Source: Perna viridis (taxonomy: Eukaryota). From it: a stretch of DNA of 64,000 nucleotides. The stretch is taken from assembly GCA_037379345.1 (NCBI GenBank), contig CM074521.1, positions 32,264,704 to 32,328,703 of the forward strand, read 5' to 3'. The notes under the pieces were generated by a model. That model ran no database searches. It had not been told where the DNA came from and saw only the letters and a program-made list of their open reading frames with translations. A program made the translations under genes and the position numbers. Numbering within the stretch: position 1 is the stretch's first letter; each line of letters begins with the position of its first letter. Shown one piece after another: positions 6,418 to 30,099 of this stretch.

Positions 6418-9400
6418 ATGGACTTCATCAAACTGTTTATATTTTGTGGATGTATTTCTTTTGTGAATGGCATTAGTAAGTAATTATGTCTGTATTAATA
6501 TCTTGAAATCCATTTCTGTCTTTTTGGCTAAAACGTGAGATTCCTATATATATATTTTACAAATATTTAAGTACTATTATATTTAAAACATTAAGCTATA
6601 TGTTTTGTATCTGCCTTAAACACTTCCTTTCAGAAAATATTGTCACTTTTTCTTGGGATTTATTATTCCTATTAGTTGTACCTTTCTTGTGATAGTGAAA
6701 TCATGTCAATCAATTTACAGTTGATATCGTTAAGTCCATAATCTTGAATTTTGTCATAAAATATAGGGAGTGTTCGATCTTTAATAGATATTAACTTGTT
6801 TTATGAATATTCTTTGCAAAATGTTCTTGTTGAAGAGGGGAAGACTTAATCATTAATCATTGTGAATATGTGCTAAGTTTGACTTGTTATATCAAATGTT
6901 AACCTCTTCCAACTAAAACCTTTCTGTTAATTTCTTGACAAAAAACGCACTAGGGCACAATGCAGCAAAGGGAGACAACTTATAGGTATTTACACAGAGA
7001 CACGTAGCACTACAAATTAAATTAGTTACGAACATTTTTGCTATCATTTCAACATTTTTCTAAAACAAATTACAATTGGGAAACCGTCATGTGCCACCCA
7101 CTAATATAATATACGGAACTGTACTTTATAGTTACAATCTAAAATATACGAAATAAGAAAAAAAAATGAATGAAATGGTTTACATGTTTATATAGAAGAC
7201 ATTCTTGTTAAAAAAAAAAACACCTACTATAAATCATACACGGAATTAAAAGGAACCATATAGTTGGAAACGTTTATGTGATAGAATACAAAACAAGATA
7301 GGCAAACAAGAGATTATAAAAATATCTAGACAAATTATAAATTTCTTCCGGCTAACTCAAAACTTGAATACTCGTATGTTTGTTTTTGTGGAATAGAGAA
7401 AAAAACATTTGACGTAAGGAGTAAACATAATCATGTTTATTGCTTTTGAATACGAACAAAACCTTAACGTTAAAAGGTGGTAAGACTGACAAATGATTGT
7501 TATACATTGGCAGATCCTAAGATGATGTTCCGGGGGTGCAAACCCTTTCCCTCTTTTCTGGAAAAAAATATTTTGTGCAAAAGTTTGGAAGTTGGACAAA
7601 AGATACATATACCCTGGAAGCTCCTTAAATAGATTTCTGAATTGGAAACTCCCCTTTTAATATAAATTTCTTGATCCCTTAGTTCTACCAGTACAGGGAC
7701 CTGTCTTTGCTATCGTGTGCTACAATGTATAAACGTACTATACTTTAGTAGATGAACGGTTCACTATTAAGCACTACGTGACTCTTCGTTTAATGATACA
7801 TGTATTTAAAATTTGCGTTCGAAAAAAAAAATAAAGCAAACAACAACAAATAAAAAGGCAAATAAACAAACAGAAATAAATTAGAAATATACAGTTATAA
7901 TGTCTAACATTCTAATGAAAAATATGTGCACAAATCTAGTGATGCAGAGCTCAAATAATGGTCTTTTCCATTAGAGAAAGCATCAACAGTTTAGATATCC
8001 AAAAACTAACGCGTCTAGACGACACCTATTATTCAGAATCTTCACAGTGAAACATTTTGGAGAATGTGTCTAAGTCGTTGTATAAAACTTGAGCTAACAG
8101 AAATGATTTCATCATTCATTTCAACTTGACTCATCTCAAACCATGTTCAAAGATCAAACGTTGTAATTGACTCTCCTACACAATGTTTACTTATTCCAAA
8201 CTAGAACATCTTACATAGACACAATGGTGACATTTATCTAGTGTATTTATTATTGTTTTTAAGACTTTGTTCGGTCAGTATGAAAGTATGAAGCTTACAT
8301 GCAGTACTAATATTTGAACAAAGACATTTGAAGTATGACTGTTTATTCTATTTTCAGGATATTCTGGTAAATTCACCACCGTTTTATCCACGTGGAGTAA
8401 CGCGCGACTTGCTAACAAATTGGTAGGATATGGTCTGAGCGGTAATTTGTCAGATATTCTAGTTACTGTAGAAGGAAATAGTTATACTTATGGATGGATA
8501 GAGGGGCTGTCAGCATATCAACCATGGTTTGAATACTTGGGTGGGTACACATTCAAATGTGCCTCATATGATTATCATATGGTGCTCGATTCATATGACA
8601 CTTTACATTTGGTAGTCATATGATTATCATAATGATTCTCATATGTTATTTTTTTCTGTAGTTTAAATGTTGGGCATATTGCCATTCTTTCAGCTTTTTT
8701 AATTCAGCCATTGAAGTTGCATACGTACATATAGAAAAAAGTTCATGGCTTTTTATTCGTTACAGGTTGTTATGTAATTAGTAATTCGAAAGTAAAAAGT
8801 ACATGGTCTGTCGACAAGGGAGATCAAGTGTTAGATTGTGTTAAGTCATGCAGTTCTACATGGTCATATTTTGGACTACAGGTATCTTAACTATTCAGAC
8901 AAATAGCGAGAAACTCTACAAATAAATATACACACAATCATTCATTTACATTGTAAACATCCAACAAACGAACAACATTAAATAGCCAAAATAAAAATTA
9001 AAAAGCCAAAATGAGATCGACTTTACACAAATTTGGGAATAGTAGATAGCAATGGCATCTTATCTTTTTAAACGCATCCATTGTGGCAAGACAAACAGAT
9101 TTAAAACATTCGACAAATGTCTTATGTCACAAGCAAACTGTTGATAATGTATACATGTTAATGTCGTGATTATAATTCAATAATAAAATAATGAATAATT
9201 AAATAATAAAACATAATTAATTAATAATAATGAATTAAATTAATAAAGGCAAATTAACAGGCAAACTATAGGCAATATTCAAAGGGAATAACCAAAAGAA
9301 GTCCATATAACAAATAACAATACCAAGGCAAAACCCGAAATGTTGGAAACAATCTTACAGTTATGGTCCTGACTTGGTACAGGCATTTCCGATTGAAATG

Positions 9401-12400
9401 TGGGGTTAAACCAGATTTTATAGAGAATTAAAGCTCAGGCTCCAAATTGTCACCGGGAAAATTGGGTAAAATCAGTAGCCAAAGCAGTACATAAGATATA
9501 CTGATGATGTTGTTAAATCCATCGTCATGACTGCAGGTTTTACTCATATCGTTCACATATACTCGCAGCTGCCAAATGCGATATTTAACAATTTCTAAGT
9601 TGTGGAGGATAAAAAACACAGATACACGGACAGTCAAGTTAGTGATTGTTGTTTTGGCTACTGTTTTTTTTTATAACAAAAGATTTCAGTTTATATGTAT
9701 TTAAAACTTACAATAGAATACTCCGAACTTACAATAAGATACACTTACCCAGCTGTTTTTTTTTTTCAGCAAAACAAATGTGTTTGCCTTGACATTATCG
9801 TACCCGATACCTCTGACGTTATCAGTCAATGTACAAGTAACTTCTGCACGGATGATACATATGCTTTTTGTGCTTCAGACAACCAGACTCTGCATCAATA
9901 TGCTGTGTATAAAAGAAGTAAGACAAACTATATACTCAAAGTAATGTGCATTCGATATGTTGATACCATTAGGGTCTACACGTAATTTATCATTCGACTT
10001 GCTAATGTAAAATGCTTGTTTCTGCGAAAAAAGATAACAAATTCAATCGGCAAAAAATAAACATGTTATGCAGGAAAATGAAACGTTAAATCACGACCAT
10101 AAAGATTTTATGCGTTCAAACGATTTTGTAATGCAAAAGAGCCAATTATCTCACCCAAATTACCGAAAACCCAAATGATTAGTCATGCAAATTGGAACCA
10201 AGATTCCAGGGGAAATCAAAGGAGTATAATCCAGGCATAAAAACTAGACAGTGAAAACAGACACACACAACAAAAAGTGTTAAAAAATTATAGTAACACA
10301 CATAAAAAAGAAGAAAAGTAAATGAGCATCTTGGACTTCACTAAAAACTTAAGAGTATGGTCCAGGTGCACTAGTATGAAAAGTGTCGTCTGCTTTTCTA
10401 GAAACATCCACATATAAAATGTCATGTCCGAGGTAGACGAAAGAGGAAAGGAAATTACGACACGATGAGCGAATCGGTTCTCATGGTGCAGATGGATATA
10501 CCATAACGATCCACGAGTTCATGATGACGACCATAAAACTTCTGTAGGGATGACTTCAATCTTGAAGCAACATAGACATGTTCAAGAAGACTAGAAGTAA
10601 GAAGCGGAATAATAGTGCGTTCTTGCCCCTTGTGCGACCTTGATTTTAGAAATAGACTATTTTTATCTTGTATCTTGCATATCAGAAATTGATAATACAA
10701 TTTACCATAATGCAAACAATGTTCTGATGTTATATATCATATTCATTATAATTTCAGGCCCGGAGGAAAGGTCCATCAGAAGCGGAGTTGGTGGATGCCT
10801 GGTTTTAACCATTAAAAGAAGCCAGTCACCCTCAGTCTACTACGAAACAGCGTCGTGTTCAACCGGACTGAGACCACTCTGTTTTAAAAATGGTATGTAT
10901 TTAAAATTAATGAACCGCACAAGGAAGACTAATCATACAGAGCAGATCTCGTAGGCTGGGTGCTTAGACTTGGCCCGTTACTCGTTTGCCCTAACTGAAG
11001 TTACATAGATATTATAACCAAATCTACTAAATTCTGACAATAAACCTCGAAAACAATGACTATATTGTCGTCTATCAACGGCGTGTGTTTTTGTTTTGTT
11101 TTTGGTTTTGTTGGTTTGTTTGTTTGTTTGTTTGGGTTTTTTTGCATTCATTGTGCATATTTTCGTTATTTCAGCAAGTTCTAGACACGCCTTATAGAAT
11201 ACGTCATGTCGCATATTTTCCCTATTAACCCCTCAATTCTTGGTAAAACCTTGACAAACACTGTCATATACTCATCTATTTAAAATGTATTTGTATTTAT
11301 AGGGAGAACGTACTACTATACTACTGGTACCAACTGGAACGGGGCAGTGGACATATGTAAATCAGCAAGCACTGTAATGGCCTCACCGTACATGATAGCA
11401 GGGTCTACTATTTCTACACCGGATGGGTCGTACTGGCTGGCACAAATACGGAAATCACAGTTTTATTTAATAAAAGGTATAAATGACAGGCCGTATTTTC
11501 GGATACAAAGACTAAGAAAGACTGAAACGAACGTGTTGTTATTTCATAGTTTACATTGAAAATGATTATTTACATTGTCCTTTCCTGGTTTTACGCAGTT
11601 TTTATTGAAAAAAATATGAATATTTATAAATATAAATTCTTGTATCCCATACATGTAACTACGATGACTGCAGAAATACACAACAAAGAATATAAAATAA
11701 CAAAAATAATACTTGCAATCAATACTGCTGTAGTGGTGACTTCAATCTTGTATGATAAACCCTGTACCAGAAGCCCAGTAAGAAGTCAAGCGCGATACAA
11801 AAAGTCTGCGTTGTTACGGCAAATATGCGTAGATACAGCAAGCTCAAGATTTACGTATGAGTTGTGACATGAAAACTCTATACGCGGGTACTGAAGGGAT
11901 GTTTTCACAGATGAAAAAAAGTTGGCACGGAATGAAAAGAAAGTCATCGCGTTTGTCGTACAATTTGGTGAATTGTTTTCCATAACCATCGATCTCTAAG
12001 TGCATGTCAAGATACTTCACAGTGTCTGTAGTATCCTTTATCTCAAGTTTTTGTATGTAGATGCGATGTATCAAATCCCCGATAATACGTCGCCTACATA
12101 GCGAAAACTGAGATAAAAGGATCTAGCTAAACAAAATAATTATTTTGGATCGCAAAAAAACGACCAATAATTTACTAGAATCCACCATTATCCACCATTC
12201 CAAAAATGACTGGATCCGCACCTTTAATTAAATAAGATTACTTGATTGATTGTTGGCATTAACGCCAAAGCAGCAATATTTCAGCTATATCCCGGAGATG
12301 AACATGAAATGGATGATAGAATGAACACGAGATGATGATGAAATAAAATATGGGGTGGGACACAAGGATAGTAGGGTCGACGAATTTTGATTACCACTGG

Positions 12401-15326
12401 AAATTGGGAGAGGGGATATAGTCAGGCAATTAAGCCTCCTGTAGCAAAACACAAAGGTTTTTACTCCTATCGAATACCACAGCTAGTTTCTTAAACGTGC
12501 GAGGAGTCTTTCCCAACACGGTGCACCACTATGGTTTGCAGTCAGGTTTTCCGTATTACGGCCTGACGACTCCAGCATGTAGCATGTAGCATGCCAGGGG
12601 TACTCCATTCGACCACTAGTAGCTCTGTGTGTACAGCACCCTAGCCCCCGGCCAGGGTTCTGAACACTGTTTAGTCGCCTTTTACGACAAAATTAGGACT
12701 GCTGTGGCTCTATTCTTTTGACACCCGGGCCCGCACGGGCTAATTGAATAAGTGTATGAAACATGCAAATATAATGTTCCCCTTCATCATCATATCAAAC
12801 TTTTGATCTTATAGATTTCATTACCGGATTTGAAAGTTTCTGCTTAGCCGCGCGTGTGAAATTAGATGGACATCTGGATATTATAGAACGATTTTGTGAT
12901 TCCACACTACCTGGACTATATTACACTAACATCATTGGTATGCCAGACCCTGGTGATCTTACAACTGCCCGATCTAACACTACAGCTGACTCCCGAGGTA
13001 CAGGAGTAAAGAAAGAGAAGCCTCCATTGTCTGAGGGTAGGTTGTATATTGCATAGAAATCTGTTTAATTAAACACCTTCAATAAATTGTTCTGTTTATT
13101 TGGGTGTTTTATTTACACAGGTTCAATCTGTCAGTTAATATTTACTAGTTATGTTGAATTAAGCAATTTGAAGTAAGTAAGCTATTAAGTGTCCATTATA
13201 ACGTGTTTATTTCAATACTGTTTCCACGCATGCTCATAAAGTATTTGAAATCTGGAAATAACGATTCCTTGCATGTTTATAACTCATAATACCATCCTTC
13301 GTTGACATGTAACAAACATTTGTCCATAAGTAGTTTGGGCAGAAAATTCCAACTCTTTATTTTCTCACTTTATGGGTTTTGTAACAGGACCAAATTATAA
13401 CTCGTACCTGATAATTATAATACATGTAGCTCATGGTTATCAATTATTATACAAAATGTAGTTCGTGGTTAACAATTATAGCTTGTGGTTAACAATTATA
13501 ATTCGTGGCTAACCATTATAGCTTGTGCTTAACAATTATAGCTTGTGCTTAACAATAATAGCTTGTGGTTAACAATTATAATTCGTGGATAACAATTATA
13601 GCTTGTGCTTAACAATTATAGCTTGTGGTTAACAAGTACAGTTCGTGGTTAACAGTTAATCTTGTCATCTTGAGTTCCTATTCTGCCTTCCTGTTACAGA
13701 TTTGTCCTTAGACAACCAACATTTTTGTAAATGGTTGCATGTGATCATCTGTTCTGTCTTTGCAGGTTTGATAGCCACAGTTGTATTTATACCATCTATG
13801 GTAGTTGTAAGCATTGTCGCAGTCGTTGGTTGGTTTGTCTACAGGTAGGTCAAATTATTTTATAAATATTGAGACATAAATAAAGGTTCCTATGCAGTGT
13901 TGTGTTCAAACGTGTCTTCCTAGTTCATTTATATTATCTCTGTTGTAAGACACTTTGTCTTATATAGATCTATCTGACGTATGACCTTATAGGTAATGAA
14001 AGTCGCTCTCAACCGCCATTCTTAAAAAATGCCGTTGACGTATGAGGGACAAATGCTTCTTTTACGAATTGCTCGTCATGAGTTAATAACACCAAGTATA
14101 GTAATACATGAATGTGTTTGATAAAGCGAGATGCTAATACCGGTATTCGGTGGGTCGTTGTCTTGGGTTAGGGAAAATTTAAGGGTGAGCAGCTGTGAAA
14201 TCAAGTACCCCTAGCTTCCTTTTTATATTCTGAGGATCATCAAAATACATATCTTATTTTATATATTGTTATACAAATAAGATCAATTATAACCGAACAG
14301 GCTTGCTGATGCTTGTTAAGTTATACTTCAATTTGATTACTTGTGCATTCATATATACCCAATCTTAATACATGTTCGTCAGCCTTACCAGACACTAATT
14401 TTAACTGACTTCCTATTGGTATCATATACAGATGTAATTTGAATGATTAAGACGTAAGCTCTTCCAGTGACCTATTCCTATCACATTGTATCTTGTATGT
14501 AACACCCCATTCTTTCCATGGTCGTTGACGTGCTTACGGATTAGCGGTAACTCAATCACACAAGTGTATTAAAAATTCTACATAAAATAAACCGGTAAAA
14601 CAGAAATTATCAACAGTTTATCATTGAAATATAGCTTAGCTTGAATGTTTTCGGTTCTATTTCAGGTGTGGCAAATGCTGTAATCAAAATCGAGAAAATA
14701 CCGGAAAGTTTGTTCATTTTGAGCCTACTTCGAGTTGCGAAGTTTCCGAAAAAGTCTCAGAAATGACGTCTAAAACTCTAAATGTCGAAAATGAATATTA
14801 TGAACCTGATGAAACATATTACGTCATCGGAAGTGACACGTATACAGAAGTAAAAGATTCATATTGCGACCCGAAAGTACTGCCTCTTAACAACGCTGTA
14901 GACAGAAGTTACGTTGGAGTGGACCAATATGCTGGTAGTAGTGAGTCAGACAATTACAACACGCTCACAAGAGATAAACATGCCTGTATAGATATGGAGG
15001 CTGTTAAATCGAACTCAAATCAGTACCATACGCTTACACGGGGTATTAACCTAGCAGACGCAACTCATGGTGAAAAGATATCGACTTACGACAGAATGTC
15101 CTCAATTAGAAGGGCAAAAAATAACACCGATACTTCTGGCAGTCTTGGTAGTTTAGATTCATTACACAATGCTTCTGGTATTTATGACACCGTAGTTCTT
15201 AACGAGGATAGTCGAAGTAATTCCAAAGAAAACCCAAGAAAAACGGATAATTATGATAATGTGCAGAACGACATCCAACCCCAGGACGAAGACGACCAAT
15301 ATGACCACTTGGATAATGCTATTTAA
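6418..15326 (+). CDS. Type-I transmembrane receptor, 591 aa: signal peptide, C-type-lectin-like halves flanking a WSC domain, second lectin-like unit, TM, Tyr-rich tail. Exons 6418-6475, 8358-8540, 8766-8881, 9770-9917, 10758-10892, 11303-11476, 12815-13036, 13766-13844, 14666-15326
   Basis: All 8 introns are GT-AG with matching phases (1,1,0,1,1,1,1,2); total 1776 nt = 592 codons including stop. Signal peptide MDFIKLFIFCGCISFVNG. WSC signature YLGCY...CVKSC...YFGLQ..KCVC...C...C...C...VY. TM LIATVVFIPSMVVVSIVAVVGWFVY. The last exon contains supplied ORF 14763-15326. Confidence 0.85.
10180..10640 (-). mobile_element. Penelope-like element fragment (RT C-terminus plus downstream non-coding part)
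   Basis: Minus frame RLKSSLQKFYGRHHELVDRY, followed by the non-coding block shared with 1226-1520, 43212-43396 and 61640-61745. Confidence 0.75.
11735..12075 (-). mobile_element. Penelope-like reverse transcriptase fragment
   Basis: IY..LEIKDTTDT..YLD.HLEID...TKLYDKRDDF..F...NIPSVPAY.VFMSQLIR, a characteristic PLE RT segment; frameshifted. Confidence 0.8.
12237..12740 (-). mobile_element. Short non-autonomous retroelement (family A), copy 1, in intron 6 of the receptor gene
   Basis: Homologous to 25521-25935 and 60244-60770. 12-bp TSD taattaaataag (12225-12236) / taattgaataag (12741-12752); (CAAT)n-like tail. Confidence 0.8.
13425..13655. repeat. 20-bp minisatellite (aacaattatagcttgtggtt) in receptor intron 7
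   Basis: About 11 tandem units. Confidence 0.9.
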
Positions 15327-29940: not shown

Positions 29941-30099
29941 NNNNNNNNNNNNNNNNNNNNNNNNNNNNNNNNNNNNNNNNNNNNNNNNNNNNNNNNNNNN
30001 NNNNNNNNNNNNNNNNNNNNNNNNNNNNNNNNNNNNNNNNNNNNNNNNNNNNNNNNNNNNNNNNNNNNNNNNNNNNNNNNNNNNNNNNNNNNNNNNNNN
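29941..30099. other. Assembly gap (159 N)
   Basis: Run of N. Confidence 1.

What the first reader, a model, noticed from the sequence alone, without database searches (positions are those of the whole stretch)
8358..13036. Receptor ectodomain with a WSC domain set into split C-type-lectin-like halves; complementary Cys loss suggests a nested or circularly permuted lectin fold
Seen: exon 2 looks like a CTLD N-half (TWSNAR..., GWIEG) but lacks the first conserved Cys (N where W-x2-A-x3-C is expected). Exons 3-4 are a full WSC domain. Exon 5 is a CTLD C-half with all three Cys (GGCL..ASC..PLC). Exon 6 is a second N-half with its Cys (NWNGAVDIC..YWL). Exon 7 is a C-half lacking the last Cys (FCL..FC..LPGLY). 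Known: canonical CTLDs have a C1-C4 disulfide linking helix 1 to the last strand. Inference: the two Cys-less halves (exons 2 and 7) may form one domain, and exons 5 and 6 a circularly permuted, disulfide-closed CTLD. That would give an interlocked lectin pair carrying a WSC carbohydrate-binding module, an unusual candidate glycan-recognition architecture.
Basis: partly seen in the sequence, partly recalled or inferred. Interest (0 to 1): 0.8.

Follow-up and report, generated by a model that had tools for sequence, protein, structure and literature searches.

The report
Lectin-like receptor with nested WSC domain
This is a real, expressed gene for a cell-surface receptor in which a complete WSC sugar-binding domain sits inside the first of two small C-type-lectin-like domains. 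The unusual missing-cysteine pattern is real, but the proposed interlocked fold could not be tested and the gene family's make-up leans against it.

Summary
Exons 2-7 have AG/GT borders and compatible phases. Spliced RNA-like contigs from three studies join e2-e3-e4, e5-e6 and e6-e7-e8. The 591-codon model runs signal peptide, ectodomain, membrane span, tail.

Exon-family profiles support a tandem pair of compact C-type-lectin-like domains:
- The e6 family matches canonical lectin domains of the same genome (hhalign E 6.6e-6).
- e2 resembles e6, and e5 resembles e7.
- e2 and e6 end at the phase-1 intron in the Gly codon of WxWxDG, as canonical lectin genes here do.

Exons 3-4 are a standard two-exon, phase 1-1 WSC cassette, placed where the long loop of domain 1 would be. 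A paralogue on contig 8 repeats the whole layout, and contigs from other samples repeat its first two exons.

The cysteine pattern is real and unique to this gene. Four relatives have Cys where e2 has Asn. Ten other e7-type exons have Cys where e7 has Tyr.

Two family genes have e6-type and e7-type exons adjacent and no e2- or e5-type exon was detected near them, which favours colinear pairing.

Other readers of this scan flagged similar WSC-plus-lectin-half genes elsewhere in this genome.

The parts
6418..6475 (+). Exon 1: ATG and a 19-residue hydrophobic signal peptide, ending in phase 1
   Evidence: Read from the sequence. Donor A|GTAAGT. The phase fits e2.
8358..8540 (+). Exon 2: N-half of lectin-like domain 1 (strand 1, helix 1, helix 2, W-I-E-G-L strand). 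Asn at 8414-8416 stands where relatives have Cys C1.
   Evidence: e2 family vs canonical lectin domains hhalign E 0.0012, and vs the e6 family E 0.0031. All 10 PDB profile hits are Link or C-type lectin domains, but weak. Ends in the split Gly codon, phase 1, as canonical lectin genes do.
8766..8881 (+). Exon 3: first half of the WSC domain (Cys 1-3, Y-F-G-L-Q), phase 1 in and phase 0 out
   Evidence: e3-like exons follow e2-like exons in L011, L012 and the contig-8 paralogue.
9770..9917 (+). Exon 4: second half of the WSC domain (Cys 4-8), phase 0 in and phase 1 out after V-Y-K-R
   Evidence: Home-made WSC profile E 0.005 at profile positions 52-85. Same cassette structure as the contig-5 WSC array.
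10758..10892 (+). Exon 5: C-half of lectin-like domain 1 with Cys C2, C3 and C4 (10796, 10856, 10880). No EPN/QPD or WND motif.
   Evidence: e5 family vs e7 family hhalign E 0.0011 with the three Cys in register. The only other e5-type exon is in the contig-8 paralogue.
11303..11476 (+). Exon 6: N-half of lectin-like domain 2 with Cys C1 (11356-11358) and a Y-W-L strand. Ends in a split Gly codon, phase 1.
   Evidence: e6 family vs 13 canonical lectin domains hhalign probability 85%, E 6.6e-6. Best PDB profile hit is DEC-205, E 0.056.
12815..13036 (+). Exon 7: C-half of lectin-like domain 2 (Cys C2 12841, C3 12895; Tyr 12919-12921 in place of C4), then a Thr/Ser/Pro-rich stalk
   Evidence: Alignment of 11 e7-type exons, all others with Cys at this column.
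13766..13844 (+). Exon 8: membrane span
   Evidence: The RNA contigs join 13036 to 13766, not to the possible acceptor at 13700. The stretch is hydrophobic.
14666..15326 (+). Exon 9: cytoplasmic tail of about 220 residues, rich in Tyr, ending in stop TAA
   Evidence: No Pfam family. The same exon is the subject of the neighbouring note s1-776438.

Best explanation
The gene encodes a type I membrane receptor. Its ectodomain is a tandem pair of compact C-type-lectin-like domains, both lacking the long loop that carries the calcium and sugar site. Domain 1 is e2+e5 and domain 2 is e6+e7. A complete WSC domain (e3+e4) is nested in domain 1 at the point where the long loop would leave and re-enter the core. 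The likely origin is exon shuffling: a two-exon WSC cassette with phase 1-1 borders landed in the conserved phase-1 intron that splits lectin genes of this genome after WxWxDG. Inferred function: the lectin-like cores act as scaffolds and the WSC domain supplies glycan binding at the usual lectin binding face, with the signal passed through a tyrosine-rich tail. In this gene's lineage the Cys of helix 1 in domain 1 and the last-strand Cys of domain 2 were both lost. That leaves one unpaired Cys in e5 and one in e6, 25 residues apart. Whether they stay free, bond to each other or bond between molecules is open.
For: Shown: exon borders and phases, and spliced RNA-like contigs from three studies. 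The e6 family is a lectin N-half (hhalign probability 85%, E 6.6e-6). The e2 family matches canonical lectin domains at E 0.0012. e2 resembles e6 (E 0.0031, 53 columns) and e5 resembles e7 (E 0.0011, Cys in register), while cross-comparisons give nothing. PDB profile hits for e2 are all Link or DC-SIGN domains and for e6 DEC-205, each weak. e2 and e6 end in a phase-1 split Gly codon at the same place as canonical lectin genes on contig 12. e3-e4 share intron position and phases with the WSC cassettes of contig 5, and the eight-Cys spacing of WSC domains. The e2-then-WSC order recurs in contigs from two other samples. The whole layout recurs in a paralogue on contig 8 that keeps all eight lectin cysteines. 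Two contig-4 genes have e6-type and e7-type exons adjacent, followed by a membrane span. Whole-genome profiles find no e2- or e5-type exon near them. So e6+e7 looks like a self-sufficient unit. Inferred: the exon-shuffling origin, WSC as the binding element, and signalling through the tail.
Against: No structure of the joined protein was computed, so the pairing of halves is inferred. Colinear pairing means two different conserved disulfides each lost one partner in the same gene, while no other family member lost any. That is unusual and unexplained. The link from C4 of e5 to strand 1 of e6 is about 6 residues, against about 20 in tandem lectin domains of the same genome, and it contains an Asn-Gly turn, which would suit a hairpin between the two. 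Single exons give no Pfam hit. e5 and e7 alone do not match canonical lectin profiles significantly (E 0.35 and 0.25). I could not read upstream of the contig-4 genes, so their single-domain status rests on absence of profile hits.
Confidence: 0.6

Rival explanations
1. Nested, swapped pairing. e5+e6 fold as a circularly permuted lectin-like domain closed by the e5 C4 to e6 C1 disulfide across a tight hairpin. e2+e7 fold as an outer, disulfide-poor lectin-like domain that carries both the WSC domain and the permuted domain in its long-loop position.
For: The Cys losses are exactly complementary and unique to this gene, as expected if one disulfide was lost as a pair. The total ectodomain Cys count is even (14). 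The e5-e6 link is very short and has an Asn-Gly turn. In the lectin fold the first and last strands pair and the termini lie together, and the long loop enters and leaves at one place (PMC7618208), so the permutation is geometrically possible.
Against: e6-type and e7-type exons occur adjacent, before a membrane span, in genes where no e2- or e5-type exon was detected. The paralogue with all eight Cys needs no swap. The tandem-repeat similarity of the halves fits ordinary duplication. There is no structural evidence: searches were uninformative.
Confidence: 0.15
2. Relaxed constraint. The gene is a drifting member of an expanded receptor family, and the two Cys losses are simply damage to both lectin-like domains, with no new structural arrangement.
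For: It is the only family member with lost Cys. A partial copy about 1 Mb away has already decayed: stops in e3', loss of e4-e6, and tandem triplication. That copy shares the Asn.
Against: The 591-codon frame is intact with clean splice sites. Spliced transcripts appear in runs of at least three studies. The Asn is older than the roughly 76%-identical duplication, yet the frame has stayed open.
Confidence: 0.1
3. Not a lectin fold. The e2/e5 and e6/e7 modules are lineage-specific cysteine modules that only mimic lectin motifs.
For: No Pfam hit on single exons. The profile matches of e5 and e7 to canonical lectin domains are not significant. The fold of e2 alone had low confidence.
Against: The e6 family matches at E 6.6e-6 over helix 1 to the WIGL strand. 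The lectin intron position and phase are shared. All PDB profile hits of the e2 family belong to the lectin superfamily. The Cys spacing C2-x18/20-C3-x7-C4 is in register.
Confidence: 0.08

Closest known systems
Type I membrane receptors with C-type lectin-like domains (layilin, CD302, chondrolectin; the multi-domain mannose receptor / DEC-205 family)
   Same: Signal peptide, lectin-like ectodomain, single membrane span and cytoplasmic tail with tyrosine motifs. DEC-205 is the best PDB profile hit of the e6 family.
   Different: Both domains here are compact, with no long loop, no EPN/QPD or WND calcium-site motifs and no strand-0 hairpin. The inter-domain link is about 14 residues shorter than in tandem lectin domains of the same genome. 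A WSC domain is nested inside domain 1.
Compact lectin-like domains without a long loop (Link modules such as LYVE-1 and CD44; bacterial intimin/invasin domains)
   Same: About 100 residues, with the long loop replaced by a short connection. LYVE-1 is the best PDB profile hit of the e2 family, E 0.081.
   Different: The hit is not significant. No Link-module signature was tested. Here the loop position of domain 1 holds a whole extra domain.
Proteins that combine WSC and C-type lectin domains side by side (polycystin-1; bivalve-specific lectin-domain proteins with WSC noted in PMC10140915)
   Same: WSC and a lectin-like domain in one extracellular region. The paper reports WSC among the extra domains of bivalve lectin-domain proteins.
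   Different: In those, as far as described, the domains follow one another. Here WSC interrupts the lectin-like domain. I found no description of such nesting in two literature searches. That is a limited search, not proof of absence.
Loop-swapped dimers of snake-venom C-type lectin-like proteins (factor IX/X-binding protein type); from my own knowledge, not checked here
   Same: They show that the long-loop region of this fold can be exchanged between two lectin-like units. This is the nearest precedent for the swapped reading.
   Different: There the swap is between two chains and involves only the loop. The reading here would be a swap of whole halves within one chain.

Membership tests
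C-type lectin-like domain (Pfam PF00059 / CTLD fold) | Significant match to a lectin-domain profile | tested here: inconclusive
   Pfam on single exons found nothing. A profile of 13 canonical lectin domains of the same genome matches the e6 family at hhalign probability 85%, E 6.6e-6, the e2 family at E 0.0012, e5 at 0.35 and e7 at 0.25. The joined domains were not searched.
C-type lectin-like domain (Pfam PF00059 / CTLD fold) | Four conserved cysteines: C1 in helix 1 bonded to C4 in the last strand, and C2 bonded to C3 | tested here: not met
   Domain 1 has C2, C3 and C4 but Asn at C1. Domain 2 has C1, C2 and C3 but Tyr at C4. The contig-8 paralogue meets the feature in both domains. Actual bonding was not tested.
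C-type lectin-like domain (Pfam PF00059 / CTLD fold) | WIGL-type core strand after two helices | tested here: met
   e2 has G-W-I-E-G-L and e6 has Y-W-L-A-Q-I. In the hhalign alignment the e6 strand aligns to the WIGL column of canonical domains.
C-type lectin-like domain (Pfam PF00059 / CTLD fold) | Double-loop three-dimensional fold | not testable with these tools
   It needs the joined exons, which have no reference. e6 and e7 as two chains gave no answer. e2 alone had pLDDT 46.
C-type lectin-like domain (Pfam PF00059 / CTLD fold) | Calcium and sugar site motifs in the long loop (EPN/QPD, WND) | tested here: not met
   These motifs are absent from e5 and e7 as read. The connection from the second strand to C2 is 13 residues (plus the WSC domain) in domain 1 and 9 in domain 2, against about 30 in a canonical gene.
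C-type lectin-like domain (Pfam PF00059 / CTLD fold) | Gene structure shared with canonical lectin genes of the genome | tested here: met
   There is a phase-1 intron in the Gly codon after WxWxDG in the contig-12 genes (L032, L036). The profile continues in the next exon from the same position. e2 and e6 end the same way.
WSC domain (Pfam PF01822) | Significant match to the WSC profile | tested here: inconclusive
   Pfam on the two half-domain exons found nothing, and the whole-genome PF01822 scan does not list them. A home-made profile of 7 WSC domains of this genome ranks e4 (E 0.005, positions 52-85) and e3 (E 0.03) first among the nine exons, each on its proper half.
WSC domain (Pfam PF01822) | Eight cysteines with the family spacing and the aromatic-x-G-L motif before the C-x-C pair | tested here: met
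   C-x22-C-x3-C-x13-C-x-C-x14-C-x4-C-x7-C with Y-F-G-L-Q, read against the alignment of WSC domains of this genome. One spacing is x4 where they have x3.
WSC domain (Pfam PF01822) | Two-exon cassette structure seen in this genome | tested here: met
   The contig-5 cassettes enter in phase 1, split in phase 0 after y-a-G-v-E, and leave in phase 1 just after V-Y-K-S. e3-e4 do the same.
   This needs a fold of the joined chain or disulfide mapping. The indirect family evidence leans against it.

The most novel reading that the evidence does not exclude
The ectodomain is a nested, half-swapped lectin pair. e5+e6 form a naturally circularly permuted C-type-lectin-like domain, closed by a hairpin and by the only remaining C1-C4-type disulfide. 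That domain sits, together with a WSC domain, inside the long-loop position of an outer domain made of e2+e7. The clean loss of the outer domain's disulfide in this gene would be the footprint of that pairing.
Probability: 0.15. Interest if true: 0.8.

Novelty: new variant of a known kind. Interest (0 to 1): 0.5.

Why it matters
The long loop of the C-type lectin fold is where calcium and sugar bind, and it is the part that varies most between family members. Here a whole, independently folding carbohydrate-binding domain appears to have replaced that loop, through insertion of a phase-compatible exon cassette into a conserved intron. This would be a clear natural case of domain-in-domain evolution at a binding site. 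The layout has been kept in a paralogue, and its first two exons in at least two other samples. It gives a small, tractable receptor family for two questions: can a lectin core serve as a mere scaffold, and how are lost structural disulfides tolerated or rewired? If the swapped pairing were true, it would be a natural circular permutation of a very well studied fold.

Tried and rejected
- Pfam on each exon separately found nothing, even at E 10.
- phmmer of e6 and e2 against PDB sequences gave only a weak SIGNR1 lectin hit for e6, E 0.22.
- BLASTP of e2 vs e6 and of e5 vs e7 as single sequences gave no alignment. The relation showed only with family profiles.
- The representative-library search with e2 gave two exon-sized fragments only and no full-length annotated relative.
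- The word search with e7 had no candidates. With the e9 open frame it returned only this gene's own 187-aa ORF.
- The metagenome scan with the e2 alignment gave one 1-kb contig.
- The ESM Atlas search with e6 gave no usable hit.
- Complex prediction with e6 and the folded part of e7 as two chains returned 'no answer' (score 0.01). This is not evidence either way.
- AlphaFold2 of e2 alone with six aligned rows gave pLDDT 46, which is unusable, and it was not sent to a fold search.
- No signal-peptide exon could be placed upstream of the contig-4 genes within the 1 kb held.
As a result the paralogues at C8:9.68-9.70, 9.75-9.78 and 9.80 Mb, C4:31.68-31.72 Mb, C1:56.87 Mb and C13:14.27 Mb are known only from single exons.
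I redid the step by coordinates.
- The joined, spliced protein was never searched or folded.

Full report
**The gene**

The window is AT-rich animal DNA (GC about 0.34) from contig 11 of a 723-Mb assembly. I did not check that.

With three further exons the model is:
- e1 6418-6475: ATG and a 19-residue hydrophobic leader
- e2 8358-8540
- e3 8766-8881
- e4 9770-9917
- e5 10758-10892
- e6 11303-11476
- e7 12815-13036
- e8 13766-13844: membrane span
- e9 14666-15326: tail and stop

Every border from e1 to e8 is phase 1, except the e3|e4 border, which is phase 0.

**Expression and splicing**

Twelve runs of organism A hold 5-17% of the sampled words of the 9.1-kb gene, about its exon share. When four runs from four studies were laid on 8200-13900, contigs from three of them carried spliced joints:
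- e2-e3-e4 (X1 record 1)
- e3-e4 (X6 record 19)
- e5-e6 (X6 record 21)
- e6-e7-e8 (X1 record 4, X5 record 18)

The joints fall at the predicted borders. The membrane exon starts at 13766, not at the possible acceptor at 13700. The e4-e5 joint was not among the rows shown, and no joint skipping e3-e4 was listed. Very deep contigs in introns 4 and 6 are repeats expressed from elsewhere.

**What could not be done**

Single exons, each half a domain, give no Pfam hit.

**Relatives outside this genome**

An exhaustive HMMER search of 1.84 billion representatives with e2 found only two exon-sized fragments, at 42% and 39% identity. Their contigs are a Logan assembly and a JGI sample labelled 'Abe'. 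Both carry an e3-like first WSC half downstream of the e2-like exon. A third short contig is a near copy of the first. The order lectin N-half then WSC is therefore conserved at about 40% identity. All three contigs have Cys where e2 has Asn 19.

**Relatives inside this genome**

- A decayed partial copy lies about 1 Mb away, at C11:33.298-33.313 Mb on the minus strand. It has three tandem 4.69-kb units of e2'-e3'-e7' with stops in e3', no e4-e6, then single e8' and e9'. DNA identity is about 76%. Its e2' also has Asn at the C1 position.
- A profile of e2 relatives found a full paralogue on contig 8, at about 9,659,570-9,670,421 on the minus strand. It has the same six exons in the same order and with compatible phases. 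It keeps all eight lectin-type cysteines.
- A profile of e7-type exons found nine more such exons (contigs 8, 4, 1, 13 and 7). Each has Cys at the column where this gene has Tyr 35. Seven of the eight examined are followed within about 0.1-1.1 kb by a hydrophobic membrane-like frame.
- In two contig-4 genes an e6-type exon lies 0.3 kb before the e7-type exon.
- e5-type exons exist only here and in the contig-8 paralogue.
- e2-type exons exist here, in the decayed copy and in the paralogue. There are also weak hits 28 kb and 6 kb upstream of two other e7-type exons.

**Are these lectin halves?**

I used 13 single-exon canonical lectin domains of the same genome as a profile. The hhalign results are:

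| Comparison | Result |
|---|---|
| e6 family vs canonical profile | probability 85%, E 6.6e-6, helix 1 to the WIGL strand |
| e2 family vs canonical profile | E 0.0012, helix 1 with the C1 column in register |
| e2 family vs e6 family | E 0.0031 over 53 columns |
| e5 family vs e7 family | E 0.0011, all three Cys columns in register |
| e2 vs e7, and e5 vs e6 | no match |
| e5 and e7 vs canonical profile | right end of the profile, not significant |

Profile searches of PDB sequences give only lectin-superfamily proteins for the e2 family (LYVE-1 Link module, then nine DC-SIGN entries). For the e6 family DEC-205 comes first. All of these hits are weak.

Gene structure agrees. Canonical lectin genes on contig 12 have a phase-1 intron inside the Gly codon that ends WxWxDG, and the profile resumes at that Gly in the next exon. 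e2 and e6 end in just such a split Gly codon.

Both domains lack the long loop and its EPN/QPD and WND motifs.

**Is e3+e4 a WSC domain?**

- The eight cysteines and the Y-F-G-L-Q motif fit the spacing of WSC domains of this genome.
- A home-made profile ranks e4 and e3 first among the nine exons, each on its proper half (E 0.005 and 0.03).
- The cassette structure is that of the contig-5 WSC array: phase 1 in, phase 0 split after the G-[LV]-[QE] motif three residues before C-x-C, and phase 1 out just after V-Y-K.

So a standard 1-1 WSC cassette sits in the lectin intron at the long-loop position. Exon shuffling is the natural explanation, but it is an inference.

**The cysteine puzzle and the pairing of halves**

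This gene alone lacks C1 in e2 and C4 in e7, leaving one orphan Cys in e5 and one in e6, 25 residues apart.

Three things are in favour of the swapped reading:
- A disulfide is normally lost as a pair.
- The link from the e5 Cys to strand 1 of e6 is about 6 residues with an Asn-Gly turn, against about 20 in tandem lectin domains here.
- In this fold the first and last strands pair, and the long loop leaves and returns at one point (PMC7618208). The permutation is therefore geometrically possible.

Three things are against it:
- The halves look like an ordinary tandem duplication.
- The paralogue with all cysteines needs no swap.
- e6-type plus e7-type exons occur as neighbours in genes where no e2- or e5-type exon was detected, so e6+e7 behaves as a unit of its own.

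The only structural attempts were uninformative. My odds are colinear domains with a nested WSC about 0.6, the swapped nest about 0.15, decay about 0.1, and not a lectin fold about 0.08.

**Comparison with what is known**

WSC and lectin domains are known side by side, in polycystin-1 and in bivalve-specific architectures (PMC10140915). Compact lectin-like domains without a long loop are also known (Link modules). Two literature searches found no description of a WSC, or any other domain, nested in the long-loop position, and none of a permuted lectin domain. That is limited evidence.

Other first-stage notes flag similar WSC-plus-lectin-half genes on other pieces of this genome. The architecture has therefore been seen before in this scan.

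I rate it a new variant of a known kind, of moderate interest.

Noticed in passing
G000:C5:46,698,000-46,847,000 (not in the window): A very large tandem array of two-exon WSC cassettes with a period of about 2.77 kb. The PF01822 scan lists more than a hundred near-identical half-domain hits, so it may be one giant WSC-repeat gene.
   Followed up: partly
G000:C11:33,298,000-33,313,000, minus strand (about 1 Mb from the window): A decayed partial copy of this gene. It has three tandem 4.69-kb units of e2'-e3'-e7' with stop codons in e3', no e4-e6, then single e8' and e9'. DNA identity is about 76%.
   Followed up: yes
window 13465-13658: A 20-bp minisatellite in intron 7, 9.7 copies with 82% matches. 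A related array lies at the matching place in the decayed copy.
   Followed up: partly
window 10110-10680 and 11640-12780; also L068 720-1180 and L071 770-1180: Repeat fragments in introns 4 and 6 with very high RNA-contig depth. A minus-strand frame at 11844-12074 has relatives just upstream of e7-type exons in two contig-8 paralogues. It has no Pfam family and is probably a common mobile element.
   Followed up: no
G000:C12:19,971,000-20,032,000: A cluster of at least seven canonical lectin N-half exons on both strands. All stop at the same phase-1 Gly codon after WxWxDG.
   Followed up: partly
window 14666-15326: The tail has many tyrosines, including Y-x-x-[ILV] motifs and two Y-x-T-L motifs 21 residues apart. 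It has no Pfam family. It is the subject of the neighbouring note s1-776438.
   Followed up: no
window 29941-30099: A run of 159 N (assembly gap or masked).
   Followed up: no
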